Positions 3,987 to 50,657 of a stretch of 64,000 nucleotides of DNA are shown in pieces. Both the position numbers and the translations under genes were made by a program. Numbering within the stretch: the stretch's first letter is position 1; every line of letters begins with the position of its first letter. The notes under the pieces are model-generated. The model saw nothing but the letters and a program-made list of their open reading frames with translations, was not told the origin of the DNA and made no database searches. Source of the stretch: Salisapilia sapeloensis CBS 127946 (lineage: Eukaryota > Protista > Oomycota); NCBI GenBank assembly GCA_023334545.1, contig JAADVB010000072.1, forward strand, positions 8,513 through 72,512, written 5' to 3'.

Positions 3987-4479
3987 CTCTTCGTGGATTG
4001 GCGCATACCGCTCCTAACCGCCCATTCATTGGTCGAAATACACGCTCTCTGCCATTTGGTGATTTGTTACAGCAGACGGTGAGAAAATCAATGTGGTGTT
4101 TTCGAAACTTTTCCATACTTTAAGTAGTACAAAGCGGATTTTGGCCGAAATATCCATCACGTCGGTGTCTGAAAGAAGATAAGTTCGCACGGTACTGCCG
4201 TCGCCAAGCCGGAAAGAAAAAGCAAGTACACCCAGGAGGAAGCACCCTTTTCGCCCTCCGAACGCGTACTTTTAATTCGCTTTGTACAACGACTTGCTGG
4301 ACGAAAGCAAGCAACTCAACGGACCAGACAAAAGCGTCCTATACGTGGAGAATTAGCGTCCAATTTTTCGGGAAAACAAGTGTAAAACGCACCCCTACTG
4401 AACGTAAGGAGAAAGCAACTCACTCCCGCACACTTTCATTACGTTGACGTTCCCGCACACGTTGTAGATATTGCGCACT

Positions 4480-7146
4480 ATGTCTACGTCCAATCCGCGC
4501 GGGAGCATGCGCTTCAACCCTGCCAGTAAGAGTGGACGCCGTGGCCGCGTCAGCAGTCAGGAGATCTCGTCGTCGCACTCGCAAAATGCCGGCAACCTTT
4601 TTGGATCAAGCCCGACGACCGGCCGGAACACGATCTCAGGCGCGAAAGCGGGAGGAGCCTTGTCTAAGGATGAACTTACGGGCGGTCAGAGTGCCGGATT
4701 CGTTGCGAGCAAAACTGGATTTCTCACGAAACGCGCCATGTCGTCCATGGACGCCTTTGCTAATTGGAAGGAGCGCTTTTTCGTGCTGGCGGAAGGACAC
4801 TTGTCCTACTACAAGCAAGGGGGAGGCTTTTTTAATACCGGCAAGGACGACATTGTGCACCTAAAGGGTGAATTGCAGCTGACGCCCGACTCGATTGTCC
4901 GGAAGAGCGGGATTGACGACAAAGCCAACGTCTTTGAGGTGATCACACCGTCAAAGAAGATGTTTGCACAGGCGAGCACGGCAAAAGAAACGGAGGATTG
5001 GATCAAGAGCATCTGGAGTCACATCAATGCGATGAAGAAACCGTCTCCTGGTGCTGGTGGCAGAAGAAATAGTTTCCAGGAAGTCGCAGCTGCGATTGGA
5101 TCCAATGCAAATGCCAATTTGAGCTCTTCGAACGGCCCGACGGAAGATTACTCTCGTCCGAGCATGTTGGAAGACCACGAAATCGTTCGTGGAGCAGACA
5201 ATTCAACTGACCCGAAGGATGTGGTCATTAAACAGCTTTTGGAAGAGAACAGGCAATTGCGTGAGCAGTTGGCGATGAAAGATCAGGTCATTCATAGTCT
5301 CGAGACCGGTGAGCGCGGCGACACGAATGGAGGACTGACGGGGGCTCCTTCGAAGCTGCGATCATCTGCGCCACAGATGATTTTGGACTTGCGTGATGTT
5401 AAAAAGAAGCAGTTCCAACTCTTTGACGCGGCAGAAGTGGGTAACGCTCATTTAATAGCAACTCTGCTCCGCGACAATGTCGTCGATGTGAATGGTGTGG
5501 GCATGAACCAGACGACTGCTTTACACTTGGCGGCGAGCATGAACCATCCAAAGGTGGTTCGAGAGCTCCTTGCTCGAGGAGCAGACACGAGTGCAAAGAA
5601 CGGAGATAGCTACACAGCGTTGCATCTTGCGTCAAAGGCTGGTAATACGGAATGCGTTGATGAATTATTGAATGCGAATGCGGACCCGAATGCAACTGAT
5701 TACCAAGGCAATGGAGCGATCCACATGGCTGCAGAAATTGGCAACATCCCGATCTGCAAGCAGTTGATGGCACGTGGTGCTCGCACAGATGCTGCGAACG
5801 CCCAAGGTTCTCTACCTGTTCACTTGTCACCAATCGGTCACCCGATTCGTGTCTTGCTCGGTAGCAAGTCGGACTTGGCAGACGCGACGAATCCGTCTCA
5901 GCCACCAAAGCCGCGAGGTGACAGTCGCGAAGGAAATGACACGGAAGTCAGTCATATTGCTTTCAAGAACAAGTACCAGCAAGATCTAGCCTTGGGACCT
6001 CGCGACTTTGAGTTCATTAAAGTCCTCGGTCGTGGTGCGTTTGCCAAGGTCTACTTGGTTCGTGGCAAGGGTTCCAACCGTGATAACTGGTACGCTCTGA
6101 AAGCGTACAACAAGCAGGGTATCGTTCAGAAGAACCAGGCGCAGTACATTTTGACGGAGAAAGCAGCGCTACAAGCTTGCTCCGACCATCCGTACATTGT
6201 GACGTTGTACTATGCGTTCCAGTCGCAAGACCGACTGTTCCTTGTGATGGACTATTGCGGTGGTGGAGACTTGCTGTCGTCCTTGACTCGACGCAAGTCG
6301 TTCACGGAATCCGAAGCTGCGTTTTACATTGGTGAAATCGCTCTAGCCTTGTCCCACTTGCACTCGAAGAACATTGTCTTCCGCGATCTCAAGCCAGAGA
6401 ACGTGGTCATGGATCTAGATGGTCACTGTCTCCTGACGGACTTTGGTATCTCAAAGGAAGGCATTAAGGACCACACGTCCGCGAACACGTTCTGTGGATC
6501 GCCCATGTACCTCGCGCCGGAGATGCTATCGCGAAGTGGACATGGCTTTGCGTTGGACTGGTACTCTGTCGGTGCGCTTTTGTTTGAGCTGCTGACTGGT
6601 CTTCCTCCGTTCTACACGAACGACAAGAAGCAGTTGTTCCACAACATCCTTCGTGGCCAGTTGCAGATCCCAGAGTACTTGTCCCCGAACGCTCGAGACT
6701 TGATCCAGCGTCTGCTGCACCGAGACCCGAAGCAGCGACTCGGATCCGGTCCGAGTGGCGACCGAGAGATCTTTGAGCACCCGTTCTTCTCTGGTGTCGA
6801 CTGGGAGCGCATGAAGCGACGAGAACTGTCGCCTCCGTTCCGACCGAAGATCAAGTCGGACCCTTCTGGCATCCCGGACACATCCAACTTCCCGCAGACG
6901 TTCACGGAGCAAGAGATCTCCGACATGGAGCGTGGTGTCGCTGCGCCTCCTGGCCCGCAAGGTCAACAGATTGAGCGTTCGAATTCGAATGTGAAGAAGG
7001 AAGCGCGCTTGTTCCAAGGCTTTGACTTTGCTCCCGACTCGGAGCTGGATAAGGACGCGAAACAGTTTGAACGCCTAGCGCTGGAGACGAGCTACAAGGA
7101 CTTGCCGCCTCCAGAACTCAAGGAAACGGATGAGTTTGCCATTTGA
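4480..7146 (+). CDS. PH domain + coiled coil + ankyrin repeats + AGC (Akt/SGK/S6K-like) Ser/Thr kinase
   Basis: PH: KTGFLTKR...WKERFFVL...EDWIKSI. Four to five ANK repeats (TALHLAA). Kinase motifs GRGAFAKV, ALK, FRDLKPEN, DFG, TFCGSPMYLAPE. AGC C-tail PPFRP...DTSNF...FQGFDF. First ATG at 4480. Confidence 0.93.
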   Translation: MSTSNPRGSMRFNPASKSGRRGRVSSQEISSSHSQNAGNLFGSSPTTGRNTISGAKAGGALSKDELTGGQSAGFVASKTGFLTKRAMSSMDAFANWKERFFVLAEGHLSYYKQGGGFFNTGKDDIVHLKGELQLTPDSIVRKSGIDDKANVFEVITPSKKMFAQASTAKETEDWIKSIWSHINAMKKPSPGAGGRRNSFQEVAAAIGSNANANLSSSNGPTEDYSRPSMLEDHEIVRGADNSTDPKDVVIKQLLEENRQLREQLAMKDQVIHSLETGERGDTNGGLTGAPSKLRSSAPQMILDLRDVKKKQFQLFDAAEVGNAHLIATLLRDNVVDVNGVGMNQTTALHLAASMNHPKVVRELLARGADTSAKNGDSYTALHLASKAGNTECVDELLNANADPNATDYQGNGAIHMAAEIGNIPICKQLMARGARTDAANAQGSLPVHLSPIGHPIRVLLGSKSDLADATNPSQPPKPRGDSREGNDTEVSHIAFKNKYQQDLALGPRDFEFIKVLGRGAFAKVYLVRGKGSNRDNWYALKAYNKQGIVQKNQAQYILTEKAALQACSDHPYIVTLYYAFQSQDRLFLVMDYCGGGDLLSSLTRRKSFTESEAAFYIGEIALALSHLHSKNIVFRDLKPENVVMDLDGHCLLTDFGISKEGIKDHTSANTFCGSPMYLAPEMLSRSGHGFALDWYSVGALLFELLTGLPPFYTNDKKQLFHNILRGQLQIPEYLSPNARDLIQRLLHRDPKQRLGSGPSGDREIFEHPFFSGVDWERMKRRELSPPFRPKIKSDPSGIPDTSNFPQTFTEQEISDMERGVAAPPGPQGQQIERSNSNVKKEARLFQGFDFAPDSELDKDAKQFERLALETSYKDLPPPELKETDEFAI

Positions 7147-7299: not shown

Positions 7300-9198
7300 T
7301 TAAAGCACGTGCAGACCACCGCTTTCCAAAATACTACGCTGCTTGGCCTGGTTCTTCTTGTACCCCGCGAAGACGAAACCACCCGCAGCGACCACCACGC
7401 CGACGACGATCACACCGGCGATGCCGGCTGGGGATAAACCGCTGCTCGCCGATGCGGCGCCAGACTGGTTGTTTACGTTGTTCGTCGGCGTGTCCTCCGA
7501 TGGAGACGGAGCTGATGTCTCCGGCTTCTTGGCGTTCGTGAAATGATCGTCGTCGCCTTGAGACGCCCCCGTCACCTTGCCTTGGTCCTGGTTGCCGTCC
7601 ATGGCAGCCGGAACGACTCCGCCTGGCGAAGCAGACTCGTCGTCCTTGGACGAAACTGGCTTGTCTCCAGTGGACGAAGCTGGCTTGCCAATGCTGGCGG
7701 AACCTTGGCTTGACGACTTGGACGTCGACGGGTCCTCCGCCTGCGAGAACGTTGGCGTATCGGCCGTGGACGGAGCTTTCGTCGTCGGCTTGGGCGTGCT
7801 AGCGGCACTAGCAGAGCTTTGCGACGGAGGACTGGCGTTCGTGCCTTCCAGAGAGCCTGGTTGGGACGCCAGTGCTGGAGATGGCGTTAAGACAGACTGC
7901 TTCGGAGGAGTCTGAGCTGGCGCGGAAGACTCTTCCGTCTCGGGACTAGCGTTTTCCTCTTCTTTAGCTGGAGCCGTCGTCGACGGTGCCGGTGTCTGCT
8001 CACCGTCGCCCTCCGTCGGATTCTGGTACATACTCGCACCGTCTTCATTCACAGGGTCTTCAGCCGGCTTTGCAGCCGATCCAGTCCCTGGGGCAGCAGC
8101 ACCCGCAGAGCCAGCATTCGTAGCGGCCGCATTGTCCACCGCTGCACCAGGCACTGGCGTGGCAGCAGGCACAGCTCCCGCCGGATCAGCCCCGTCAAGA
8201 GTATCGCCTTCGCTTCCTTGCTCCGAAACAGGAATTTCGGCAGTCGGATCGGTAACTTCGGCTGCAGCTGGCTCTGCGCCTTCAGGTGCCGCGCCCTGAT
8301 TTCCTTCATCCAGAGCGGAAACCTCAGTATTTTGACTGGAAACCTCGGCTGCGTTGGGCGTCGCATCACTGTCGTTGGCGGTCGATTCCGAAGAAACAGC
8401 TGCGCTCGCGGTAGTCTCGTCTTCCTCTGGCGGCTTTGCGTCCGTCGCCTCTTCCTCCGCCTTGACGAGCGTAATGAAGCCAGCGTAGACTTCGTTTGCC
8501 CGGCTCTCGAGTGGTACAGACGCTTCAACCTCTTGGAAGTAGTTTTCTTGGCCTTGTTCCACGCACATGGCGTTCGCACCGATGGTGCCGTCCGGGCACA
8601 TCTTGGTTGGCGATCCGAACTTGTACCATGCCGAGCCATCGCTGGCAGCATCGAAGGCGCAGACGATGCCGGTCGTCACACTGTCGTGACTGCAGACAGA
8701 GTAGCTGCAACCGACCTTCTTGGCAGCGGCCCAGACGACTTGCGAGTACGAGTTCTGAAAGCCTTCTCCGACTGGGTCGCCCGTGGCTTTCGGTGCTGGC
8801 AAGTCCGCCAACGTCGACTGGGCAGTGTTCTTGACCCATTCGTCGATGGCATTGTCCACGGCAGTAGCCGGGTCAAAGCCTTCTGTCGGCTGTTGATGGT
8901 ACAGGAAGCCAGGCTCGAACGTTGTGCCTTCCAAGAGTGGTTCGCAGGTGGTAGGCGCTTTTTCAGCAGCGGTGGCTGCAAGTGCGTCATCCCACACGAG
9001 TTGGTTCATGTTCGCCGCCGAGTAGGGGAGACCGGCGACTCGGAAGAAGGAGAAGCGGTCCAGCCATAACATTTGCTGGTCTTCCGAGAAACCTGGGCTA
9101 TCTTGTAGCTTCCGAAGGGCGTGGTTGTCATCTTTCGCAGAGACGCTGTTGACTGCGAGGGCAGTCGCTAGAACGGCTGCGAAGCCTCCGACGTGCAT
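7300..9198 (-). CDS. Type I membrane protein: signal peptide + CAP/SCP (PR-1-like) domain + long A/P/S/T/E-rich stalk + TM + short tail
   Basis: Signal peptide MHVGGFAAVLATALAVNSVSA. CAP features: MNQLVWDDALAATA, AIDEW, YSQVVWAAAKKVGCSYSVC...VCAF. TM GIAGVIVVGVVVAAGGFVFAGY followed by KK. Confidence 0.85.
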   Translation of the reverse strand: MHVGGFAAVLATALAVNSVSAKDDNHALRKLQDSPGFSEDQQMLWLDRFSFFRVAGLPYSAANMNQLVWDDALAATAAEKAPTTCEPLLEGTTFEPGFLYHQQPTEGFDPATAVDNAIDEWVKNTAQSTLADLPAPKATGDPVGEGFQNSYSQVVWAAAKKVGCSYSVCSHDSVTTGIVCAFDAASDGSAWYKFGSPTKMCPDGTIGANAMCVEQGQENYFQEVEASVPLESRANEVYAGFITLVKAEEEATDAKPPEEDETTASAAVSSESTANDSDATPNAAEVSSQNTEVSALDEGNQGAAPEGAEPAAAEVTDPTAEIPVSEQGSEGDTLDGADPAGAVPAATPVPGAAVDNAAATNAGSAGAAAPGTGSAAKPAEDPVNEDGASMYQNPTEGDGEQTPAPSTTAPAKEEENASPETEESSAPAQTPPKQSVLTPSPALASQPGSLEGTNASPPSQSSASAASTPKPTTKAPSTADTPTFSQAEDPSTSKSSSQGSASIGKPASSTGDKPVSSKDDESASPGGVVPAAMDGNQDQGKVTGASQGDDDHFTNAKKPETSAPSPSEDTPTNNVNNQSGAASASSGLSPAGIAGVIVVGVVVAAGGFVFAGYKKNQAKQRSILESGGLHVL

Positions 9199-22500: not shown

Positions 22501-23651
22501 GTTTCAGCTCCTGGGAACGGAGCCACCGCAGACGGGAAGTTGTGGGTTTCAGCCGTGAGCAGCAGATGCGCCTCCTGCTTTTGCTCTTCCGCAGGACCTG
22601 GAGCTCCTGGCGTCGACGGCACGAGGCGAGTGAGGTGGCTGCCACGAATGACGGACGAGTTGTCGTGGAAAGCGATGACACTGTTCTGCTTTGTCTCTGG
22701 CGTGAGGGTGTTGCGAACCATTTGGAAGAGCGTGTCTGGCTTTTCAACGCCATCCAAAACCATTTTACCACCAAAGAACCAGTGACGAGAGTGCTCTGAG
22801 TTACTCTGACCGAGGTCGAAGAGCTCCACGTCCGTCGGATCGCGCTTCAGGTTCTCACGGAAGAGCTGCGTGTAGTACGCAATGTCATGCTCATCGAAAC
22901 CGAGACCGATATCGTCGTTCAGTTCCTTAAGAGCCGCTTCTCCACGCTCCATGACAGCAATACGACGCACTGGCTGGGCAGTCTTGCCATGCCAGAATGA
23001 CGTCAAGGGAGCTGGGTACTCTTGCTGCGTCATGCGATCACACTCGATCGACAGCAGCGCTTCCTTCAGGCCAGCATTGTCCGCTGCCGAAGTGATGAGG
23101 TAGCGAGTAGCACGCTCAATACGCTTGACGTTCGTGAGACCACAGGCCTTGCAGATCGTCGCAGCGTTCGTGGACCAGGCAGTGGAAAAGTTCATACGAG
23201 GTCCGACCTCGACAAGCAGTCCATTTGATTTTTCCTATCGATGTTGCAATTCGTGAGCATCGAATGAGTGGGCAATCGTAGGAAAAGATGCGTTTGATAG
23301 ATGCAATGCATTTTACAAGCATGCAAGAGGTAATCGAGGTGAGTTGATTGCATAGTAGATGGGCATCCAAAGTATCAATTGATATGATTGCGTCATATAT
23401 CATACCTGCAAGAACGGATCGTTGGCACGCGTAAGTGGCTGCTCGAACGTCTCGCTAAGGAGCCAATGCAGCGTCGCTTGGTGGTCCGCGCTGAGCGGTT
23501 GACCGTCCACTGTTTCGACGTAGAAACAGCTCTCGGTCTCCAGCTGCTGCACCTTGACATTAGCTTTCCGCTCCAACTCGGCTTGGAGTTTCTCACTCGC
23601 ATGCGGTGCCAAAGCTGGTTGCCGATAGAAGCGTTGCAGCTGAGCCATCAT
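19524..23651 (-). CDS. PFAS: Phosphoribosylformylglycinamidine synthase (large PurL/Ade6), 2 exons (intron 23235-23405)
   Basis: VEVGPR, QSNSEHSRHWFF, TAETHNFP, GAETGTGGRIRD, HDQGAGG, GHDRSDGG, GGFSFADVLGS, GACNGCQ (glutaminase Cys), MMPHPER. Confidence 0.97.
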
Positions 23652-28649: not shown

Positions 28650-30513
28650 ATGAATTGCCCGAGTATCTTTCTGATAGTGCTCTTCGGCTTCTTTGTTCAA
28701 AGTGTGCTGAGCAAAAATTGCACAAAACCTGAGGCGGATAAAGCAAAAGGACTTATCAAGCAAAAGGACACAACACAGTCTGATGACAGTCTTTGCGTAA
28801 GCGTGGATGACTTTACCTTCACCTGCTCTGATTCATGCATTGGCTTATATGCTGACTTGAACGAAGCACTGCCAGACTGCGAGCTCGACTCGCAAGGATT
28901 CGAAATTGTGAACATAAAGGATTTATACGGCGTCTACTTTCGCATCTGTAGTGTGAGGTCGGAAGGTGGAATGATGCAAAGTAGAAAAGAATTGGATGGT
29001 ATTCATTCATTTAATTTCATTTTGCGCTTCAATTGACAACTTGATCTGTTTGCATTTAGAGGATGAACAGAGTGTAATTATATCAAGCTCGGAAGCATTG
29101 CAGAGCATCAGATCGTCACCTGAGGGCAGCGCAGACACATCAATTGTATCGTCAGCATGGGGTACGGAAATAAACTTGTGGATATCAAATGTTTATTGGT
29201 AATATCAAGCTGGTCAGGTGGATCAAAGAGTTCATCAGGCAGCACATTTCGAAGTGGTCGGCAGGAAAAAGGAGCACATGATTATTATTCGGGCAGCTCG
29301 ACAGCAGACTTTGCAAGTGCATCAAGTATTAATGTACACTACGGTGTATATATGAATGAGGCCATTTTTAGAGGCGGTGTGCTCATCCTAGTCTATGTCA
29401 TCATTCCGGTGCTTCTACTTGTATCTTGTGGATGGTTTGTCTGCTTTCATATGACCCAGCCCGCCAAGGCAACAGAAGGTAGAGTAAAGTTGTTGACCGA
29501 TATAGCAGCCTGGTCTCTGACATCACTCCATGTAGCTGACTCATCCAGTGACCCCAGCATTTATGACCTCTGGGGTGACAGGGAGCTCGTTGAGAAAAAG
29601 CTAAAGTTCACGGATATTAAAGACAAAAAGGTCCTAGGCTCCGGAGCTTTCGGCGTCGTCTGGCTGGTGACGTACAACAATACAAGCTATGCATCCAAAA
29701 GGTTGCTACAAAGAGTCGTGGATCCAGAAGTATTTGAAAAGTTTATCGATGAAGTCAAGTTGGTGGCCAAAATCGAGCATGTAAATATTATTAAGTGCAT
29801 TGGTGTCGCATGGACAATGAGATCCGATTTCCAGGCTCTCTTTGAGTATATGCCAAACGGCGACTTGAGGGACTACTTGATGCAATCAGCTACTCGTCAC
29901 TGGACCAACGAGAAGCTTCTTATCGCAATAGATATTGCAGAAGCACTCGTATATGTTCAGTCTTTCGAAACTCCCATCGTCCATCGTGACCTCAAGTCTC
30001 GCAATGTTTTACTATCAGAAGAGATGGTCGCGAAAGTAAGCGACTTTGGTTCTGCTCGTCTCATGTCGGAAAATAATACCATGACCACTCAGGCTGTTGG
30101 AACTGCTCGGGTATGTATAACACATTCATATATTCTTCGTTTATTTCTAAAATCTCTGATCGACCTATTTCTTTACGTCCTAGTGGCTAGCACCAGAAGT
30201 AGTGGCCGGTGAGTTCTACGACCATACTTGCGACTCGTACTCATTAGGCACCATCTTGACAGAGCTAGACACACACGAACTACCACTGCACAACGTCACG
30301 GACGGTAAAGGTGAAAAACTCCAGGATTTGGCGCTCATGCATCACATTGCTTGCCGCAAAGTCAAACCGATTGTCTCCAAAGACTGCCCGGAGCCAATGC
30401 GGGAACTCGTGGAAAAGTGTCTGAGTTATGAACCGAAGGACCGACCGACAGCAGTGCAAATTTCCTTTGCATTGCGCAAGATGCTGAATAATGGAAGTGT
30501 GCTGGAAACTTAA
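28650..30513 (+). CDS. Receptor-like TKL kinase with signal peptide, elicitin-like 6-Cys ectodomain, Ser-rich linker and TM; 4 exons (introns ~28953-29061, 29162-29217, 30111-30183)
   Basis: SP MNCPSIFLIVLFGFFVQSVLS. Cys spacing C-24-C-9-C-3-C-13-C-22-C with LPDC. TM VLILVYVIIPVLLLVSCGWFVCF. Kinase motifs LGSGAFGVV, ASKRL, HRDLKSRN, DFG, GTAR|WLAPE. All introns are GT-AG and preserve frame. Confidence 0.85.
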
Positions 30514-30577: not shown

Positions 30578-31303
30578 CTAAGCTTCGTCCGAGTACTCTG
30601 GATCACTGTCGTATGTGTATGCAGTCTCGGAGTTTCGGTGAAGAAGGGGAAGTACGGTCTTGTCGAATACAGGTTGTGTACGAGGATAGATGGCAATGAA
30701 AGCAAGTTGGATCATGCACAATAGGCCTGGAATTGCTGCTTGGAGAAACAGGAACAAGTCCGCTTTGAGGATGGAGATGAGCGTCCAGATAGAGCAGTCG
30801 AGGAAGCCACTAAAGACCATGCCAAACGGAATGATATCGGAGCAGCGTTGTTGGATGACTTGCTGGAGTTCGGATAATGGAGACATGAAGAGTGCAAGAG
30901 TAGTCATGTCTGCAAGTATACCTAGAATAATTTGCATATTCGCAAGATCGACAAACGGAAAGAGGTAGAAAGTTGATAATGCAAGCATGGACGCCAGCGA
31001 AGAGACAATAAGACGCTGGTGCTTGCGTCTTTGCAATCGGTCGTACTTGTAGTAGATACACAGGTAGACAGACCCCATGAATGCACCATACATGTTGATC
31101 GTACCGAGAGGATAGACCATGTTGTTGGCGAAGCTGTACAAGATCCAGACATAGCTCTGTATGAGCATTGCCAATAGCGGATAGAAGTTCATATGAGAGG
31201 TATCCCTCGTCTTGTGTACATAATACAGATCCGGAATGAGGCTAGTGTAGATCAAACCAGAGGATGCAGTGCCAGCAGCACTAAGTATATCGAGTACAGT
31301 CAT
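30578..31303 (-). CDS. SWEET: SWEET/MtN3 sugar transporter-like protein (7 TM)
   Basis: Two MtN3 repeats: SLIPDLYYV...YPLLAM..QSYVWILY...TINMYG and SPLSELQQVI...IPFGM...WTL. Confidence 0.87.
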   Translation of the reverse strand: MTVLDILSAAGTASSGLIYTSLIPDLYYVHKTRDTSHMNFYPLLAMLIQSYVWILYSFANNMVYPLGTINMYGAFMGSVYLCIYYKYDRLQRRKHQRLIVSSLASMLALSTFYLFPFVDLANMQIILGILADMTTLALFMSPLSELQQVIQQRCSDIIPFGMVFSGFLDCSIWTLISILKADLFLFLQAAIPGLLCMIQLAFIAIYPRTQPVFDKTVLPLLHRNSETAYTYDSDPEYSDEA

Positions 31304-31696
31304 GAGAAAATTTTCTTAAGTGATCAACGACCATTCCAGATCGCTATAAATACATCCGACATGACTGTTCAAGATCCACTATCTCTCCCACTTGCTTCGT
31401 GCTGCTTCGGGCCACCTGGGTCCATCCATCCGGTTCTGTTTCCATCACCATGTCAATGTATTTTAATGTGACGAGGAGTTCTGTATTGTAGTCGTACTTG
31501 AGCATCCTAGTAGGTCCTTTCGTTCATTTCATGCATGGACAGTATCTATAAGCTTCAAATAGCCATCGCTAAGTGATCTTTCCACTAAACAAGCGTCGAG
31601 AAACATGTTCGCACAACCTTCGTATCGAAAAATTGCGTCCAATTGGATCGATCTGAGAAGATCTCATTCTTCCATTCGACAAGTGCTTCAGAAACA

Positions 31697-33145
31697 ATGC
31701 GGCTCCTTTCTTCCATCGCCGTGATGGCTGCAACGATTGGTTTAGCCGATGCACTTACGATCGAAAGCAAACCTTCGGGTCAGGCACCCGAAAAACTTGT
31801 CGGTGACAGGACGCCACTCGCACGGTCATGGTCCATCTCCGGCTCCGAACCGCTCACCAAGCTGGAGTTTGCAGTCCCAGGCCGAATCATCGTGTCGTAT
31901 GAAGCGGCTGAGGAAATCCAACCAGACGCTGATGTCGTGGAGGAAGTGGACGATGCGTCTGCATCCGGCAGCTTGATGGCTGCTCAAGTCGGCGATGAGA
32001 CGCTGCTCGCTACCATCCAAGTCGTTGGCAATAGCGCGCCGATGATGGATCTGTTTGAAGTGTACGAAACAAATGCTAGCTGCGAAGGTGTAAAGATGCG
32101 TCTGCACAATGACGATGCGGCGGTCGAAGGCAGCGTCCTCACCTACGTCACTGTGCATCAAGCGAATCAGATCGAAGAGCTCGGTGCGCTCTTGGCGACG
32201 GATGTAGCTGTCCATGACCGCGTCATTGTGGCTGATAGCTATGATGGCCAACTTGTCCTCGCTAGTGAAGGGAACACGGACATTGTTGTCGAGTCGAGTA
32301 CGGCTTTGAATGTGAAGTCGCTGGAAGTCGCCTTGGTAGGAGACGGCATCGTGCAATTGTCCACTCCGTCCGTGTACGTTACCAACGGCATCGACTTGGC
32401 TGTCGCCGGCGATGGTGCCATAGCCTTGTCGACCGATAGCATTAAGACTGAGACGCTAGATGTAGCCGTGACAGAGCACGGAGCGATTTACTTTGACACG
32501 CAATCTCTCGTGACGCGAAACTTGTCGGTTGCGGTCGTTGATCATGCTGAAGTCACGATGACTGACTTGTACGCGAGTGGAAGCTGCGACCAAGAGGATA
32601 TCGAGGCTGTTGGAGACGGGAAGGTGTATCTAGGTCAGATCCAGGCGAAGGAGGTGGACGTGGCTGTCTGGGGATCGGCGAATGATGTCATTGTCCAGGC
32701 GACGGACAAGCTCTCAGCCAGCACGTCATTGACAGCGACCGTGTACTACTATGGCGACAAGCCGCGTGAAATTGAGACCTCGCAGTGGCAGTTTTGGCGC
32801 CCGACATCGTGGATCGTGAAACCCGTGACGGCGAACAAGGCCATGGTGTACAACCGCCACTTGCTTCCGGCGTCCGAGGCGGTTGGTGTGGCGGTTCGCA
32901 CGGTGCGTGCCGAGGCGAGTGACGAGCCGACGGTCAAGGTGATTTCGTACGGCGATGAACAAGTCGGTAGTGAGTGGGAGATGAAGACGGTGGATACTTT
33001 GGTGCAAGCGACGGACGAGTACTCCGCGCCAATGATAAGTGGTGTAGGTATTATCGCTGCAGTTGCGCTAGTGTCGCTTCTGGCTGTCGTTGCCGTGCGT
33101 CAGTTCCGTTATGACCGTCGTGGCGAGTACACGCCACTCCTATAA
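31697..33145 (+). CDS. Surface protein with GIN/DUF2807-like beta-solenoid repeats, signal peptide and C-terminal TM
   Basis: SP MRLLSSIAVMAATIGLADA. Repeats LEVALVGDGIVQL / IDLAVAGDGAIAL / LDVAVTEHGAIYF / IEAVGDGKVYL. TM GVGIIAAVALVSLLAVVAV. Tail ends EYTPLL. Confidence 0.8.
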   Translation: MRLLSSIAVMAATIGLADALTIESKPSGQAPEKLVGDRTPLARSWSISGSEPLTKLEFAVPGRIIVSYEAAEEIQPDADVVEEVDDASASGSLMAAQVGDETLLATIQVVGNSAPMMDLFEVYETNASCEGVKMRLHNDDAAVEGSVLTYVTVHQANQIEELGALLATDVAVHDRVIVADSYDGQLVLASEGNTDIVVESSTALNVKSLEVALVGDGIVQLSTPSVYVTNGIDLAVAGDGAIALSTDSIKTETLDVAVTEHGAIYFDTQSLVTRNLSVAVVDHAEVTMTDLYASGSCDQEDIEAVGDGKVYLGQIQAKEVDVAVWGSANDVIVQATDKLSASTSLTATVYYYGDKPREIETSQWQFWRPTSWIVKPVTANKAMVYNRHLLPASEAVGVAVRTVRAEASDEPTVKVISYGDEQVGSEWEMKTVDTLVQATDEYSAPMISGVGIIAAVALVSLLAVVAVRQFRYDRRGEYTPLL

Positions 33146-36412: not shown

Positions 36413-38065
36413 ATGAACTACTCGATTACGCAGCTACTAGCGCTGCTACTTTCATTAGTTGTCTGTGTCTGTGCTGTATTCTACGCAGACTACTTGTCGA
36501 GTCTCTTGCCTTCCCAGCCGGCAGCGCTGACAATACAAGAGCAGACGCAACTCCTTCAAACGCTTAGTCATAGATCGAAACAAGCGCTAGAGAGGCAGAA
36601 GAAAGCTCTCGATGGAGGGGAATATGCGGTTCCGAAACTAGCTTTCTGCTGCAGTGCCGATCTGGATGTTTCTGTCCGAGCAGTGGATCTTATGAACGCG
36701 ATCCATAAGCAAACGAACAAGGCTGATACGGCCTTGGACGCCAAGCACTTTGAACGCATTGGCGACCTCGAGCAGCTTCAGCAGAGCTTTTCTTATTACT
36801 TTTCCCAAGGTGCCGCAGCTGAGCAGAGTATGAATTCCTTGTATGAGTTCCAAGACGTCGTTCGAACGGCTCAGAGCTTGCCAAACGTAAAGAAGCAGGT
36901 TGGTGGGAACGCCGCGACCATGGCGTTACGAGCAGCTTTGGAAGGGAATCAAGTGCTCTTAGGTGCTGCCATGGGTCCTCAGATGAAAGAGTTGTTTCAA
37001 GATAATAATGTACAAGTGGTGGGGGAAATGGGGGAGAGTGAATTAGTGAAAAAGGAGGAGGAATTGGAGGATATCCATCTCGTGCTCGAGTACTCTCGAG
37101 GAGACGTCTTTCGTGGATATACGTCTCCACGTGCGAATCGATACTATCTCAATCATGACATTCACAATGCTCGACTGTCTGTCTTGGAGCAGTTTGTTTC
37201 TGCTTTAGAAACATTCCAGCCAGAGTTGGTGGTTATCGGAGGTCTGCAGCTGATGGAAGTAGAAACGGACATGGATCGGAGGCTCGGACGCCTGCAGAAA
37301 CTCAGTCAGGCTTTGCAAAAGCTACAGACGGAAAAAGTGCCGTCCCACTATGAGCTCGCTGCTGTCTCTGGTACGTTCTTTTCCTACTTGTGTGCTTCTG
37401 TCTACTAACATTGTCCAGATTTCTCGCTCTTTGACGACACGGTCAAGATGGTGCTTCCTTACATCTCATCTCTCGGTCTGAATGAACAAGAGCTGTTTAT
37501 TTTGCATCACTACCTCCTCACACAAGCGCAACCGACGGCAACAACATCTCGTCCGACTGTCGCTCAAGTGTCAGAGCAGCTGCATGACGTCTTGACCTTT
37601 GCTTCTGAGAGTCATCAGAAGGAAGTGGATGGAGAGAGCCATCAACCACTAGCCCACCTCTCTCGCCTCCACTTTCACACACTACAGTTCCACATCATGT
37701 GCCAGAAGCCATCGTCCATATGGGACGACCCGAGGGACGCGCTCATCCAAAGTGCGCTCATGAGCTCGAAACTGGCTTGTGGCAAAGTGGCGCAGGAGAA
37801 CGTCAGTGGCGTCGGGAAAGCGCATCGGAGTGACGAGATCGAAGTGGATGGCGATCGAGTGGAAGTCTTGCTGGATCGACACGTGGTCGTGCAGGGATCG
37901 TCGAGGTCGATCAATCCGCTGGATCCGGTGATGGAGTGGGATGAAGGCGACTTTAAGTGCTACATGATCCCGATGCTTGCCTGTCGGAAGCCGGACTTGA
38001 CGGCCGGATTAGGAGACAATATCTCTGGGACGGGACTGTCGTACCATCGGATGAAGAAGGAATAG
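36413..38065 (+). CDS. ADPGK: ADP-dependent glucokinase (PfkC family), N-terminal anchor, 2 exons (intron 37371-37418)
   Basis: VGGNAATMA, DIHLVLEY, PRANRYYLNHD, GGLQLM, HYELA, SLGLNEQEL, HFHTL, TAGLGDNISG (GxGD catalytic Asp). Confidence 0.9.
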
Positions 38066-48858: not shown

Positions 48859-50657
48859 TTATGCTTGGGCTAGCGTTACCTTCATTGGCAAATCGCTGTC
48901 CACAGCCAATTCCACGCCGGGCATGGTGACGATTTGATTCGGATCCTCCTGCATCGTCAGGTCAAACTTGCTGAGAATAGAACACATCACTATCTGCAGT
49001 TCAACGATCGCCATTCGCTGTCCAATGCATCGTCTCGGTCCAGTAAGCTACACTCACAAGCGACACCGTTAAATATCTGAATTAGTATGAATGGTAGAAA
49101 GGAACGTACGAAGATCGGGAACTCAGTCGGTGTGAAAGCGATAATGCCTCCCGTCGACGAGTCAATCCAGCGCTCGGGCTTAAACTCATTTGCGTCTTCA
49201 CCCCAAACACTAGACAGGGCTCCAGTCGCTCGGATAGAAGTCATGACCTCCATGCCTTTTCCAATATACGTACCGTCACTCAGTGTAGTTGACTGAATGG
49301 CACCTCGCGTTGACATAGGAATAGACGAGTCTACACGAAGCGTTTCGCGGATGGTAGCCTCCAAGTAATGGAGCTGACTAACCTCTTCCACGGTTGGGAT
49401 TTCGGCGTTTTCGCCCAGAAGGTGGGGAAATTTGCCCTTGATCTCAGCGCGGATTTTACTCAAAATCTCCGGATGACGATTCAGTTCGATGAGGATCCAT
49501 CCCATCGTTGTGCTTGTTGTCGCCGATCCAGCGAAAAAGAAGTTGAGAACCATGTCGCGCATCAAGGTAGCGTCCGCATCTAAGTTTCCTGTTTTTTCAG
49601 CTTCCTTTGCTTGATTGTCTAAGAAAAGAGTGATCAAGTCCTTTGAACTGGACGAGGAGCTGTCGGCGCCGTGGCCGTTTTGCATCTCTTGCTTCTTTTT
49701 ATCGACAGACTTTTGGATGATATCGTAGATCAATCCATCCAAGTACTTTTTGCTCTTGGCAACTTCTGCCTCTTCACCAATACCAAACATACGTCGGAGT
49801 GCCCACAGCCATTTTGACTGTGAGAATCGAAGCAGCGTTCCATGGGAGAGGACGCGAATGCTTTCAATAAACTCACTCGTCTCCCCTCGCAATCCCTTTT
49901 GCATGCTTTCTAAATCAATGCCAAACCCAACCTAGTTTCACGAAAGTTAGTCAAATGATTTATACAAAGGTAGTAAATGTTTCTATACCTGGGTAAAGAC
50001 ATCCGTTGTAAATTCCGTGAATGAGATTCGAGCAGGGACGACCGTACCGCGCTTCGCGTATTCATTTAAGACTTGGACGAATTCACGGCTGCGCTCCCGA
50101 ATCGTCGTGTGCATGACATCTTTCATCATTTGCATGCTGAACAAGTGGGAAGCTGTCTTTCGTTGGAATTTCCATTGGTTGCCGACACTGTTGACAATGC
50201 CGTATCCGAGCAAGTCGTACATGCGTTCAATTGCCAATGGGATTTTGACAAAGACGTCGCTCTGTTTTTTGTAAACATCTTCGATATGGTCAGGGGAAGA
50301 AAGAACAACCATTGAAGGTCTATTTAAAACTTCCATCATCCAAGGCTTCCCCCCCATTTCCTCGCATACTTGGGTTACCCATTCGCTCAACCTAGCGTAC
50401 AAAATGCATTAGGCGTGCAATAAGGCTAATCAATCAGATGCCGAAACATACTGGTCACGATTGCTAGCAAGTTGTAGGGTACTACCCAAAAATGGCAGCG
50501 CTCCTTTTGGACGAGGCAGTGGTTTACCGTCAGGAGTGTAAGCACGAGGCTTTTGGTAGTACGATAAGAGCATGTATCCTGCCGCAAGTGGAAGCGCTAC
50601 GACAGCCACCGATTGCGACGTAGAAAGCTGCTCGAACTTTTCCATAGCTCGGTCCAT
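48859..50657 (-). CDS. Cytochrome P450 (CYP86/CYP704-clan-like), 4 exons (introns 50392-50451, 49932-49988, 49048-49109)
   Basis: N-terminal anchor and Pro-rich hinge, WKFQRKTASHLFS, I-helix AGSATTS, ExxR (ETLR), PERW, heme motif F|LTGPRRCIG assembled across intron 3. Confidence 0.9.

What the first reader, a model, noticed from the sequence alone, without database searches (positions are those of the whole stretch)
28650..30513. Elicitin-like ectodomain fused to a transmembrane TKL kinase: candidate single-chain sterol/lipid-sensing receptor
Seen: three ORF-track fragments splice through in-frame GT-AG introns into signal peptide + 6-Cys domain (28719-28949; C-24-C-9-C-3-C-13-C-22-C, with LPDC and a downstream VN) + Ser-rich linker + TM + kinase with all catalytic motifs. 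Established: elicitins are secreted oomycete sterol carriers (canonical spacing about C-23-C-23-C-4-C-14-C-23-C), and many oomycetes are sterol auxotrophs. From memory, to be verified: a Phytophthora LRR receptor kinase was reported to sense sterol by partnering with free elicitins. Inference: this gene may be the fused 'Rosetta stone' version, with ligand-binding and signalling modules in one chain. The C2-C3 segment (omega-loop region) is only 9 aa, so the ligand may not be a sterol.
Basis: partly seen in the sequence, partly recalled or inferred. Interest (0 to 1): 0.82.

Follow-up and report, generated by a model that had tools for sequence, protein, structure and literature searches.

The report
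Oomycete receptor kinase, orphan cysteine ectodomain
This is a real receptor-like protein kinase gene from an oomycete, but no test could show that its small six-cysteine outer domain is an elicitin, and relatives in other oomycetes already carry genuine elicitin-kinase fusions, so the find is only modestly new.

Summary
The sequence features are all present at 28650-30513: a signal peptide, a six-Cys module (C-24-C-9-C-3-C-13-C-22-C), a Ser-rich stalk, one TM helix and a complete TKL kinase. They can be joined by three in-frame GT-AG introns. Only intron 3 is confirmed by homology. Joining exon 1 to the kinase is plausible, about 0.75, but unproven.

The kinase belongs to the oomycete receptor-like kinase family (top hit 59% identity, E 1e-58).

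The "elicitin-like" label did not pass any family test:
- Pfam gave no hit at E<=10.
- An exhaustive phmmer search found no true homologue.
- A profile of genuine elicitin-kinase ectodomains scores it no better than shuffles (p 0.40).
- hhalign gave E 0.41.
- The AlphaFold models are of low confidence, and Foldseek finds no elicitin.

Weak positive signs remain. All six Cys align in register. The C3-C6 half resembles one elicitin-kinase ectodomain (corrected p 0.007). The kinase tree puts the gene next to the Pythium elicitin-kinase clade, without strong support.

Genuine elicitin+TM+kinase proteins already exist in Pythium insidiosum, P. porphyrae and metagenomes, plus Pfam-negative look-alikes in Aphanomyces. 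I found no paper describing them. Sterol sensing is unsupported, because the region that would hold the omega loop is absent.

The parts
28650..28950 (+). Exon 1: signal peptide plus six-Cys ectodomain module. It ends one base into a split codon (phase 1).
   Evidence: In-frame codon-usage score is +0.20 per codon, with the off frames negative.
28650..28712 (+). Predicted signal peptide: 21 residues, a hydrophobic core, and a small-residue cleavage motif just before K22.
   Evidence: Read from the translation. No dedicated predictor was available.
28719..28949 (+). Six-Cys module of 77 residues with spacing C-24-C-9-C-3-C-13-C-22-C. It is an orphan by sequence and possibly a much-altered elicitin-like domain.
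   Evidence: No family hit. Cys register and weak C3-C6 similarity to ELL-kinase ectodomains.
28951..29059 (+). Putative intron 1: 109 nt, GTGTGA...TTTAG, phase 1.
   Evidence: GC 0.36. Not confirmed by transcript or homology.
29060..29161 (+). Putative exon 2: Ser-rich linker. This is the least certain part of the model and could be skipped in frame.
   Evidence: No coding signal in any frame.
29162..29217 (+). Putative intron 2: 56 nt, GTACGG...GTCAG, phase 1.
   Evidence: GC 0.34. The donor resembles the confirmed ADPGK intron donor GTACGT.
29218..30110 (+). Exon 3: Ser-rich stalk, TM helix, juxtamembrane segment, and the kinase N-lobe through the activation segment.
29373..29447 (+). Single transmembrane helix, 25 hydrophobic residues.
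   Evidence: It lies in the same position as the TM of the relatives.
29622..30110 (+). Kinase domain, first part. Motif positions: GSGAFG 29637-29654, ASK lysine 29688-29705, alpha-C Glu 29742-29759, HRDLKSRN 29982-30005, DFG 30042-30050.
   Evidence: Pfam PK_Tyr_Ser-Thr 6.6e-31 and Pkinase 5e-28. Motif coordinates.
30111..30183 (+). Intron 3: 73 nt, GTATGT...CCTAG, phase 0. Confirmed by homology.
   Evidence: Removing it restores the conserved GT.R-WLAPE block that is contiguous in all relatives. Read-through hits a stop at 30210-30212.
30184..30513 (+). Exon 4: kinase C-lobe (APE at 30184-30198, subdomain IX Asp, subdomain XI Arg) and the stop TAA.
   Evidence: Pfam Pkinase 5.4e-14, profile positions 163-257..

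Best explanation
One gene of three or four exons encodes a type I membrane receptor-like kinase of the oomycete TKL family.

Shown:
- A signal-peptide-like start, a 77-residue module with six cysteines, a Ser-rich stretch of about 85 residues, one TM helix and a kinase with every catalytic residue.
- The kinase groups with oomycete receptor kinases whose ectodomains are LRRs, elicitin-like (ELL) domains, or nothing.

Inferred:
- The six Cys form three disulfides in a small extracellular knot held away from the membrane on a probably glycosylated stalk.
- Binding of an unknown ligand or partner protein drives dimerisation and trans-phosphorylation. Downstream signalling would then follow the Ca2+ influx and MAPK route shown for SSRK1.
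- The module is most likely a strongly diverged descendant of the ELL ectodomain found in related kinases. It has about 8 extra residues between C1 and C2, and has lost 13-21 residues before C3. That lost region holds the omega loop and the start of helix 3 in elicitins.
- It can no longer be called an elicitin by any test, so a sterol ligand should not be assumed.
For: Kinase family:
- 464 homologues; the top hit is Globisporangium at 59% identity, E 1e-58. Several hits are named TKL kinase.
- Pfam hits and all catalytic motifs present.

Gene model:
- Intron 3 is confirmed by homology.
- Exon 1 has coding-like codon usage, and the introns have low GC.
- The donors fit this genome's confirmed donors.
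- The first in-frame ATG opens straight into the signal peptide.
- The layout of signal peptide, Cys module, Ser-rich linker, TM and kinase is the same as in P0070, P0081, P0096 and the second gene of L002.

ELL descent:
- MAFFT puts all six Cys in register with seven ELL-kinase ectodomains, and the motif C2-x5-[FY]-[STN]-F is shared.
- The C3-C6 spacing of 3/13/22 matches the P0096 subfamily at 3/13/21.
- Global alignment of C3-C6 to P0096 gives z 3.5, p 0.0008, or 0.0066 after correcting for seven comparisons, against shuffles that keep the Cys in place. True family members score z 2-5 against each other in the same test.
- BLASTP gives E 0.009.
- The tandem paralogue of P0096 gives p 0.027 for C3-C6 and 0.010 for C1-C6.
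- In the careful kinase tree the gene is sister (89/78) to a clade holding the four Pythium-type ELL kinases. An AU test does not reject a clade of this gene with them (p 0.37).
Against: - There is no transcript evidence for introns 1 and 2, and exon 2 has no coding signal.
- Every family-level test of the ectodomain failed. In a six-frame scan of the window with the ELL profile, the exon 1 ORF is not among the hits at E<=10.
- The pairwise signal rests on one subfamily, was chosen after inspection, and is confined to the C-terminal half. The N-terminal half shows nothing.
- The kinase is a very long branch (1.8 substitutions per site), so its place in the tree is unsure.
- The AlphaFold run that gave three helices was guided by ELL sequences and is of low confidence.
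Confidence: 0.5

Rival explanations
1. There are two separate genes. One is a small secreted cysteine-rich protein of 128 residues (ATG 28650 to the stop at 29034-29036, unspliced). The other, just downstream, is a receptor kinase without a folded ectodomain. It would start at ATG 29157, or at the Met seven residues before the TM helix. Its short Ser-rich outer tail would resemble the Pythium oligandrum pair P0028/P0029.
For: - The unspliced exon 1 ORF is complete, with its own stop.
- Family members with no Cys domain and no signal peptide are real. P0028 and P0029 lie in synteny with the elicitin-bearing P0021 (the UDG gene is the neighbour in both), yet no ELL ORF exists near them in any frame.
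- Introns 1 and 2 have no independent proof, and exon 2 has no coding signal.
- In-frame GT-AG pairs are easy to find by chance.
Against: - Only 120 nt separate the stop of the first ORF from ATG 29157. That is little room for a 3' end plus a promoter and 5' UTR.
- The stretch 29157-29219 has no coding signal and overlaps the AT-rich putative intron 2.
- Both putative donors fit the GTRYG pattern of this genome's confirmed introns.
- The Inr-like heptamer at 29017 means nothing here, because the motif is not enriched in the window (47 found, 50 expected).
Confidence: 0.25
2. It is one fused receptor kinase gene, but the six-Cys module has no common origin with elicitins. It would be a lineage-specific disulfide-knot domain whose Cys spacing happens to resemble the C-terminal half of ELL domains.
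For: - No homologue among 1.84 billion representative proteins.
- Pfam, PDB, the HMM and hhalign were all negative.
- The C1-C2 and C2-C3 gaps (24 and 9) lie outside the ranges of all ELL kinases examined (16 and 19-30).
- Foldseek did not return any elicitin.
Against: - All six Cys align in register, and the C2-x5-aromatic-[ST]-F motif is shared.
- The C3-C6 similarity exceeds Cys-fixed shuffles (corrected p 0.0066).
- In this kinase family, six-Cys ectodomains of about 80 residues seen so far are all ELL-type.
- The tree position next to the ELL-kinase clade is not rejected.
- Two Aphanomyces proteins with the ELL Cys pattern also escape the Pfam model, so Pfam silence is weak evidence.
Confidence: 0.3
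3. One reading: a functional single-chain sterol or lipid sensor. An elicitin-fold ectodomain would bind sterol and directly activate the fused kinase, as a Rosetta-stone form of the SSRK1-elicitin co-receptor.
For: - SSRK1 plus elicitins is a proven sterol-sensing pair in P. sojae (PMC11551405).
- Genuine elicitin-kinase fusions exist in relatives.
- The host is a peronosporomycete oomycete, a group that established knowledge describes as largely sterol-auxotrophic.
Against: - Elicitin membership was not met (see the membership tests).
- The alignment places a 13-21 residue deletion exactly where elicitins carry the omega loop and the start of helix 3. By established knowledge of cryptogein, that region carries the Tyr47 sterol contact.
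- ELL proteins in general have no demonstrated sterol binding.
- No elicitin-like gene lies elsewhere in the window.
Confidence: 0.07

Closest known systems
Oomycete LRR receptor-like kinases (the PsRLK family of Phytophthora sojae, including SSRK1/PsRLK12)
   Same: - The same TKL kinase family. The best hits are LRR-RLKs from Globisporangium, Phytophthora and Pythium at 50-59% identity over the kinase domain.
- The same type I layout, with a Ser/Thr-rich stalk, one TM helix and a C-terminal kinase.
   Different: - There are no LRRs, and no LRR C-terminal cap. The C-x13-C of the relatives has a conserved motif that the C63-x13-C77 stretch here lacks.
- SSRK1 needs free elicitins as partners (PMC11551405).
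Elicitin-TM-kinase proteins (ELL-RLKs): Pythium insidiosum P43SY_004336 (P0021) and PINS_up023530 (P0038), the Pythium porphyrae 'elicitin-like protein' (P0070), JGI metagenome proteins P0081, P0096 and the second gene of L002, and Aphanomyces P0111/P0115
   Same: - The same order of parts.
- Six Cys that align in register.
- C3-C6 spacing nearly identical to P0096.
- Weak residue similarity in that half.
- A kinase tree position next to the Pythium members.
   Different: - Five of these score PF00964 at down to 5e-11, and their joint profile finds sylvaticin and cryptogein. The window's module scores nothing.
- The C1-C2 gap is 8 residues longer, and the C2-C3 gap is 10-21 residues shorter.
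Canonical elicitins (beta-cryptogein 1BEO, cinnamomin 1LJP, sylvaticin 2POS)
   Same: - Six cysteines.
- A Pro-Asp before C5.
- A hydrophobic stretch with VN after C5.
- About the same C3-C6 geometry (4/14/23 against 3/13/22).
   Different: - They are secreted 98-residue carriers with no TM helix or kinase.
- The window's module is 16 residues shorter from C1 to C6 and lacks the omega-loop region.
- No sequence or fold match was obtained.
Ectodomain-less relatives: Pythium oligandrum Poli38472_012402/012403 (P0028, P0029)
   Same: - The same kinase clade.
- A Ser/Gly-rich outer segment before the TM helix.
   Different: They have no signal peptide and no Cys module. They show that the ectodomain is easily lost or replaced in this clade, which is the basis of the two-gene rival.

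Membership tests
Oomycete TKL receptor-like kinase | A protein kinase domain of TKL type with intact catalytic residues | tested here: met
   - PF07714 at 108 bits scores above PF00069 at 98.7 bits.
- All motifs are present.
- Homologues are named TKL kinase.
Oomycete TKL receptor-like kinase | A single TM helix N-terminal to the kinase, and a signal peptide | tested here: met
   - A 25-residue hydrophobic helix lies at 29373-29447, in the same place as in the relatives.
- The signal peptide was read from the sequence only. It holds only if exon 1 belongs to the gene.
Oomycete TKL receptor-like kinase | Placement inside the family in a kinase tree | tested here: met
   It nests among the oomycete RLKs, but as a long branch with no starred clade.
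LRR-RLK subfamily (SSRK1-like) | A leucine-rich-repeat ectodomain with a C-x13-C cap | tested here: not met
   No LRR Pfam hit in exons 1-3. The cap motif is absent.
Elicitin (PF00964) | A match to the family profile at the gathering score (25 bits) | tested here: not met
   - No hit even at E<=10.
- The home-made ELL profile gives 1.1 bits, p 0.40 against shuffles.
- hhalign gives E 0.41.
Elicitin (PF00964) | Six Cys with ELI spacing 23/23/4/14/23, or an ELL variant of it | tested here: inconclusive
   - Six Cys are present and align in register.
- Gaps 3/13/22 fit the family.
- Gaps 24/9 lie outside the range of the eight ELL kinases examined.
Elicitin (PF00964) | The elicitin fold: a helix bundle with a beta hairpin and omega loop, and disulfides 1-5, 2-4, 3-6 | tested here: inconclusive
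   - AlphaFold gave pLDDT 38.9 for the single sequence.
- It gave 49.9 with the ELL alignment, showing helices after C1, after C4 and before C6.
- Foldseek against the PDB had a best E of 2 and returned no elicitin.
Elicitin (PF00964) | Sterol or lipid binding in a hydrophobic cavity | not testable with these tools
   This needs the expressed ectodomain. The aligned deletion removes the omega-loop region.
ELL-RLK (elicitin + TM + kinase architecture) | A PF00964-positive ectodomain on the same chain as the TKL kinase | tested here: not met
   The ectodomain is Pfam-negative. The single-chain status itself rests on unverified introns 1 and 2.
ELL-RLK (elicitin + TM + kinase architecture) | A kinase domain that clusters with known ELL-RLKs | tested here: inconclusive
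   It is sister, at 89/78 support, to a clade that contains them plus three LRR-RLKs. The AU test gives p 0.37, so the grouping is not rejected.

The most novel reading that the evidence does not exclude
The module is a remodelled elicitin fold without the omega loop. The gene would then belong to a widespread but undescribed class of single-chain elicitin-type receptor kinases, found in Pythium, Aphanomyces and environmental oomycetes. These would perceive lipids or other hydrophobic ligands directly. They would also serve as Rosetta-stone evidence that the coupling of elicitins to receptor kinases, shown in trans for SSRK1, is ancient in oomycetes.
Probability: 0.15. Interest if true: 0.65.

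Novelty: new variant of a known kind. Interest (0 to 1): 0.36.

Why it matters
Oomycete receptor kinases are few, mostly of unknown ligand, and include the only known sterol sensor of sterol-auxotrophic plant pathogens.

The useful result here concerns the class more than this gene. Bona fide elicitin-TM-kinase proteins exist in several oomycetes. They occur in tandem copies, and in one syntenic case they have lost the ectodomain. I found no paper that discusses them.

They would be better first targets than the window's gene for testing whether an elicitin fold can act as the ligand-binding part of a receptor. The window's gene shows how far such an ectodomain can drift, or be replaced, in an unsampled oomycete lineage.

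Tried and rejected
1. LRR C-terminal cap as the origin of C63-x13-C77. Rejected: the cap motif of the relatives is absent.
2. Exhaustive phmmer of exon 1. The only hit, P0121, is a His/Thr-rich tandem-repeat protein and is spurious.
3. Searching the protein database with the ELL ectodomain alignment, to deepen the profile. Nothing reached E<=0.001.
4. Metagenome scan with exon 1. The one locus, L005, is a bacterial contig (malic enzyme, pyrophosphatase, HAD) and is a false positive.
5. Exact look-up of the exon 1 ORF and of the CPT1 neighbour in public assemblies. Neither is on record, so the source genome is not in the collection.
6. Shared intron positions with ELL-RLK genes. P0021 and P0096 are intronless, and the Aphanomyces intron sits elsewhere, so this was uninformative.
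7. An Inr-like promoter heptamer inside intron 1, as support for the two-gene model. The motif is not enriched in the window, so this was uninformative.
8. AlphaFold on the single sequence and with the ELL alignment. Both models are of low confidence, and the Foldseek matches are meaningless.
9. Literature searches for a described elicitin-kinase fusion. None was found.

The only joined read, exon 3 with exon 4 for the kinase tree, carried an X at the junction.
Full report
**1. What is in the sequence**

The window is eukaryotic. Its GC content is 44-55% and it carries ordinary housekeeping genes: CPT1, FGAR amidotransferase, AP-3 beta, ADP-glucokinase and a SWEET transporter.

The CPT1 neighbour is 63-68% identical to Pythium, Globisporangium, Lagenidium and Phytophthora. 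It is 59% identical to Albugo and 53-57% to Saprolegniales. The source is therefore an oomycete of the peronosporomycete side with no close sequenced relative. Exact look-ups of two of its proteins found nothing on record.

- Exons: 28650-28950, 29060-29161, 29218-30110 and 30184-30513.
- Introns: GT-AG, of 109, 56 and 73 nt, in phases 1, 1 and 0.
- Product: 541 residues, made of the following parts.
  - A signal-peptide-like start.
  - A 77-residue module with Cys at 24, 49, 59, 63, 77 and 100.
  - About 85 linker residues, of which 27% are Ser.
  - A 25-residue TM helix.
  - A kinase with every catalytic motif.

**2. How solid the gene model is**

Intron 3 is certain.
- Unspliced, the frame stops at 30210-30212.
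- Spliced, it restores the GT.R-WLAPE block that is continuous in all relatives.

For introns 1 and 2 the evidence is indirect.
- Exon 1 has in-frame codon usage like the kinase exons (+0.20 per codon against +0.13 and +0.24), with both off frames negative.
- The three introns have GC 0.30-0.36, against 0.44-0.50 for the exons.
- The donors GTGTGA and GTACGG fit the GTRYG form of the confirmed donors of this window. Those are kinase intron 3, the ADPGK intron GTACGT and the FGAR-AT intron GTATGA.
- Only 120 nt lie between the stop of the unspliced exon 1 ORF and the next ATG.

Against the fusion:
- Exon 2 has no coding signal. Because both flanking introns are phase 1, it could be skipped.
- Relatives without any folded ectodomain do exist (see part 5).

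I put the fusion at about 0.75.

**3. The kinase**

The exon 3 ORF finds 464 proteins at E<=0.001.
- The best is Globisporangium ultimum at 59% identity, E 1e-58.
- Almost all are oomycete proteins, and several are named TKL kinase.
- Most carry LRRs followed by a C-x13-C cap before the TM helix.

In trees the window's kinase is a very long branch: 1.2 substitutions per site in the quick tree and 1.8 with the mixture model.

**4. Is the ectodomain an elicitin?**

As a reference set I took seven relatives with six-Cys ectodomains: P0021, P0038, P0070, P0081, P0096, P0111 and P0115.
- Five of them match Pfam Elicitin, down to 5e-11.
- Their joint profile finds sylvaticin (4.8e-8) and cryptogein (8e-6) in the PDB.
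- The set is therefore valid.

Tests of the window's module against the family:

| Test | Result |
|---|---|
| Pfam | no family at E<=10 |
| phmmer against 1.84 billion representatives | one spurious repeat protein |
| phmmer against the PDB | nothing |
| phmmer against the 120 kinase relatives | noise |
| Reference profile | 1.1 bits; Cys-fixed shuffles average 0.9 +/- 2.3 (p 0.40) |
| hhalign | E 0.41 over 13 columns around C3-x3-C4 |
| Six-frame scan of the window with the ELL profile | exon 1 ORF not among the hits at E<=10 |
| AlphaFold, single sequence | pLDDT 38.9 |
| AlphaFold with the eight-row alignment | pLDDT 49.9; helices after C1, after C4 and before C6 |
| Foldseek against the PDB | best E of 2, no elicitin |

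Family membership is therefore not met by sequence and is inconclusive by fold.

Some signs still point towards the family.
- MAFFT places all six Cys in register with the reference set. Relative to it, the module has 8 extra residues between C1 and C2 and lacks 13-21 residues between a shared C2-x5-[FY]-[STN]-F motif and C3.
- The last three gaps (3, 13, 22) equal those of P0096 and of its tandem neighbour on contig L002 (3, 13, 21).
- With the cysteines held fixed in shuffles, the C3-C6 half aligns to P0096 with z 3.5. That is p 0.0008, or 0.0066 after correcting for seven comparisons. Genuine members score z 2-5 against one another in the same test.
- BLASTP gives E 0.009.
- The L002 neighbour gives p 0.027.
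- The N-terminal half gives nothing.
- In the careful tree the window's kinase sits beside a clade that contains the four Pythium-type ELL kinases (89/78). Forcing it into one clade with them costs 1.8 log-likelihood units (AU p 0.37).

Taken together I rate ELL descent at roughly even odds.

**5. The architecture elsewhere**

Elicitin + TM + kinase is already in public data.
- Pythium insidiosum has two such proteins.
- Pythium porphyrae has one, which nr names "elicitin-like protein".
- JGI metagenome contigs carry them too, including two genes in tandem on L002.
- Aphanomyces euteiches and A. cochlioides have Pfam-negative look-alikes, with inverted paralogues.

The ectodomain is labile. 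The P. insidiosum gene P0021 and the P. oligandrum pair P0028/P0029 share the UDG neighbour and cluster in the tree. Yet the P. oligandrum copies have only a Ser/Gly-rich tail, and no ELL ORF nearby in any frame.

Seven literature searches, and a reading of the likely papers, found no description of such fusions.
- The 2021 elicitin review mentions only secreted, wall-bound and GPI-anchored forms (PMC8231210).
- Other calls: 24, 37, 40, 41, 43, 45, 46, 70, 71, 85.

**6. Function**

SSRK1 (PsRLK12), an LRR-RLK, binds sterol-loaded elicitins and signals through Ca2+ and MAPK (PMC11551405).

That makes a lipid-sensing role for true ELL-RLKs an attractive hypothesis. For the window's gene, however, the aligned deletion removes the region that in elicitins forms the omega loop and the start of helix 3. 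By established knowledge of cryptogein, that region includes the sterol-contacting Tyr47. Nothing shows that the fold is kept.

The best-supported mechanism is the generic one for a type I receptor kinase. A disulfide-stabilised extracellular module on a Ser-rich stalk binds an unknown ligand or partner, and the active TKL kinase then signals by trans-phosphorylation. The domain content and catalytic competence are shown. The topology, disulfides, ligand and downstream steps are inferred.

**7. Verdict**

- It is a new variant of a known kind of oomycete receptor kinase.
- Interest is moderate to low for this gene. It is somewhat higher for the undescribed ELL-RLK class that the comparison brought out.

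Noticed in passing
L002:41-1762 and L002:2037-2654: An environmental oomycete contig (JGI 3300053686) carries two elicitin-TM-kinase genes in tandem. Both have Cys spacing 16/22/3/13/21. The second runs off the end of the contig.
   Followed up: partly
L001:3001-4467 versus L006:5001-6284 and L006:6783-8066: The UDG gene is the neighbour in both loci. The Pythium insidiosum kinase has a Pfam-positive elicitin ectodomain. The two syntenic Pythium oligandrum copies have none, and no ELL ORF in six frames. This looks like loss of the ectodomain within one orthologous locus.
   Followed up: partly
L003:496-2351 (-) and L003:3001-4646 (+): Aphanomyces euteiches has inverted paralogues of the six-Cys kinase P0111. 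Their kinase halves are 99.5% identical, but their ectodomain halves are only about 80% identical.
   Followed up: no
window 31643-33145 (+): A 500-residue ORF carries a DUF2807/GIN domain ('putative auto-transporter adhesin head', E 4e-10). This domain is mainly known from bacteria, so it is an odd neighbour in an oomycete.
   Followed up: no
window 30578-31303 (-): A SWEET/MtN3 sugar transporter gene converges on the kinase gene. The two stop codons are only 64 nt apart, so the 3' ends probably overlap.
   Followed up: no
window 7300-9198 (-): A 631-residue ORF with a CAP/PR-1 domain, a family reported elsewhere to bind sterols. It lies 20 kb away and nothing links it to the kinase.
   Followed up: no
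window 4471-7146 (+): An 891-residue ORF combining PH, ankyrin repeats and a kinase. It is the only other kinase in the window and is unrelated to the receptor family (27% identity, E 4e-5).
   Followed up: no
window 36413-38065 (+) and 23236-23406 (-): The ADP-glucokinase gene is split by an intron of about 49 nt (GTACGT...CAG). The FGAR-AT gene has an intron of about 170 nt (GTATGA...TAG). Both were used as this genome's splice-site references.
   Followed up: partly
whole window: The source genome seems to be an unsampled oomycete lineage. Its CPT1 is about equally distant (63-68%) from Pythium, Globisporangium, Lagenidium and Phytophthora. None of its proteins that I looked up are on record.
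   Followed up: partly
window 48990-49904 (-): A 304-residue ORF covers only profile positions 215-393 of the cytochrome P450 model. It is either one exon of a split gene or a fragment.
   Followed up: no
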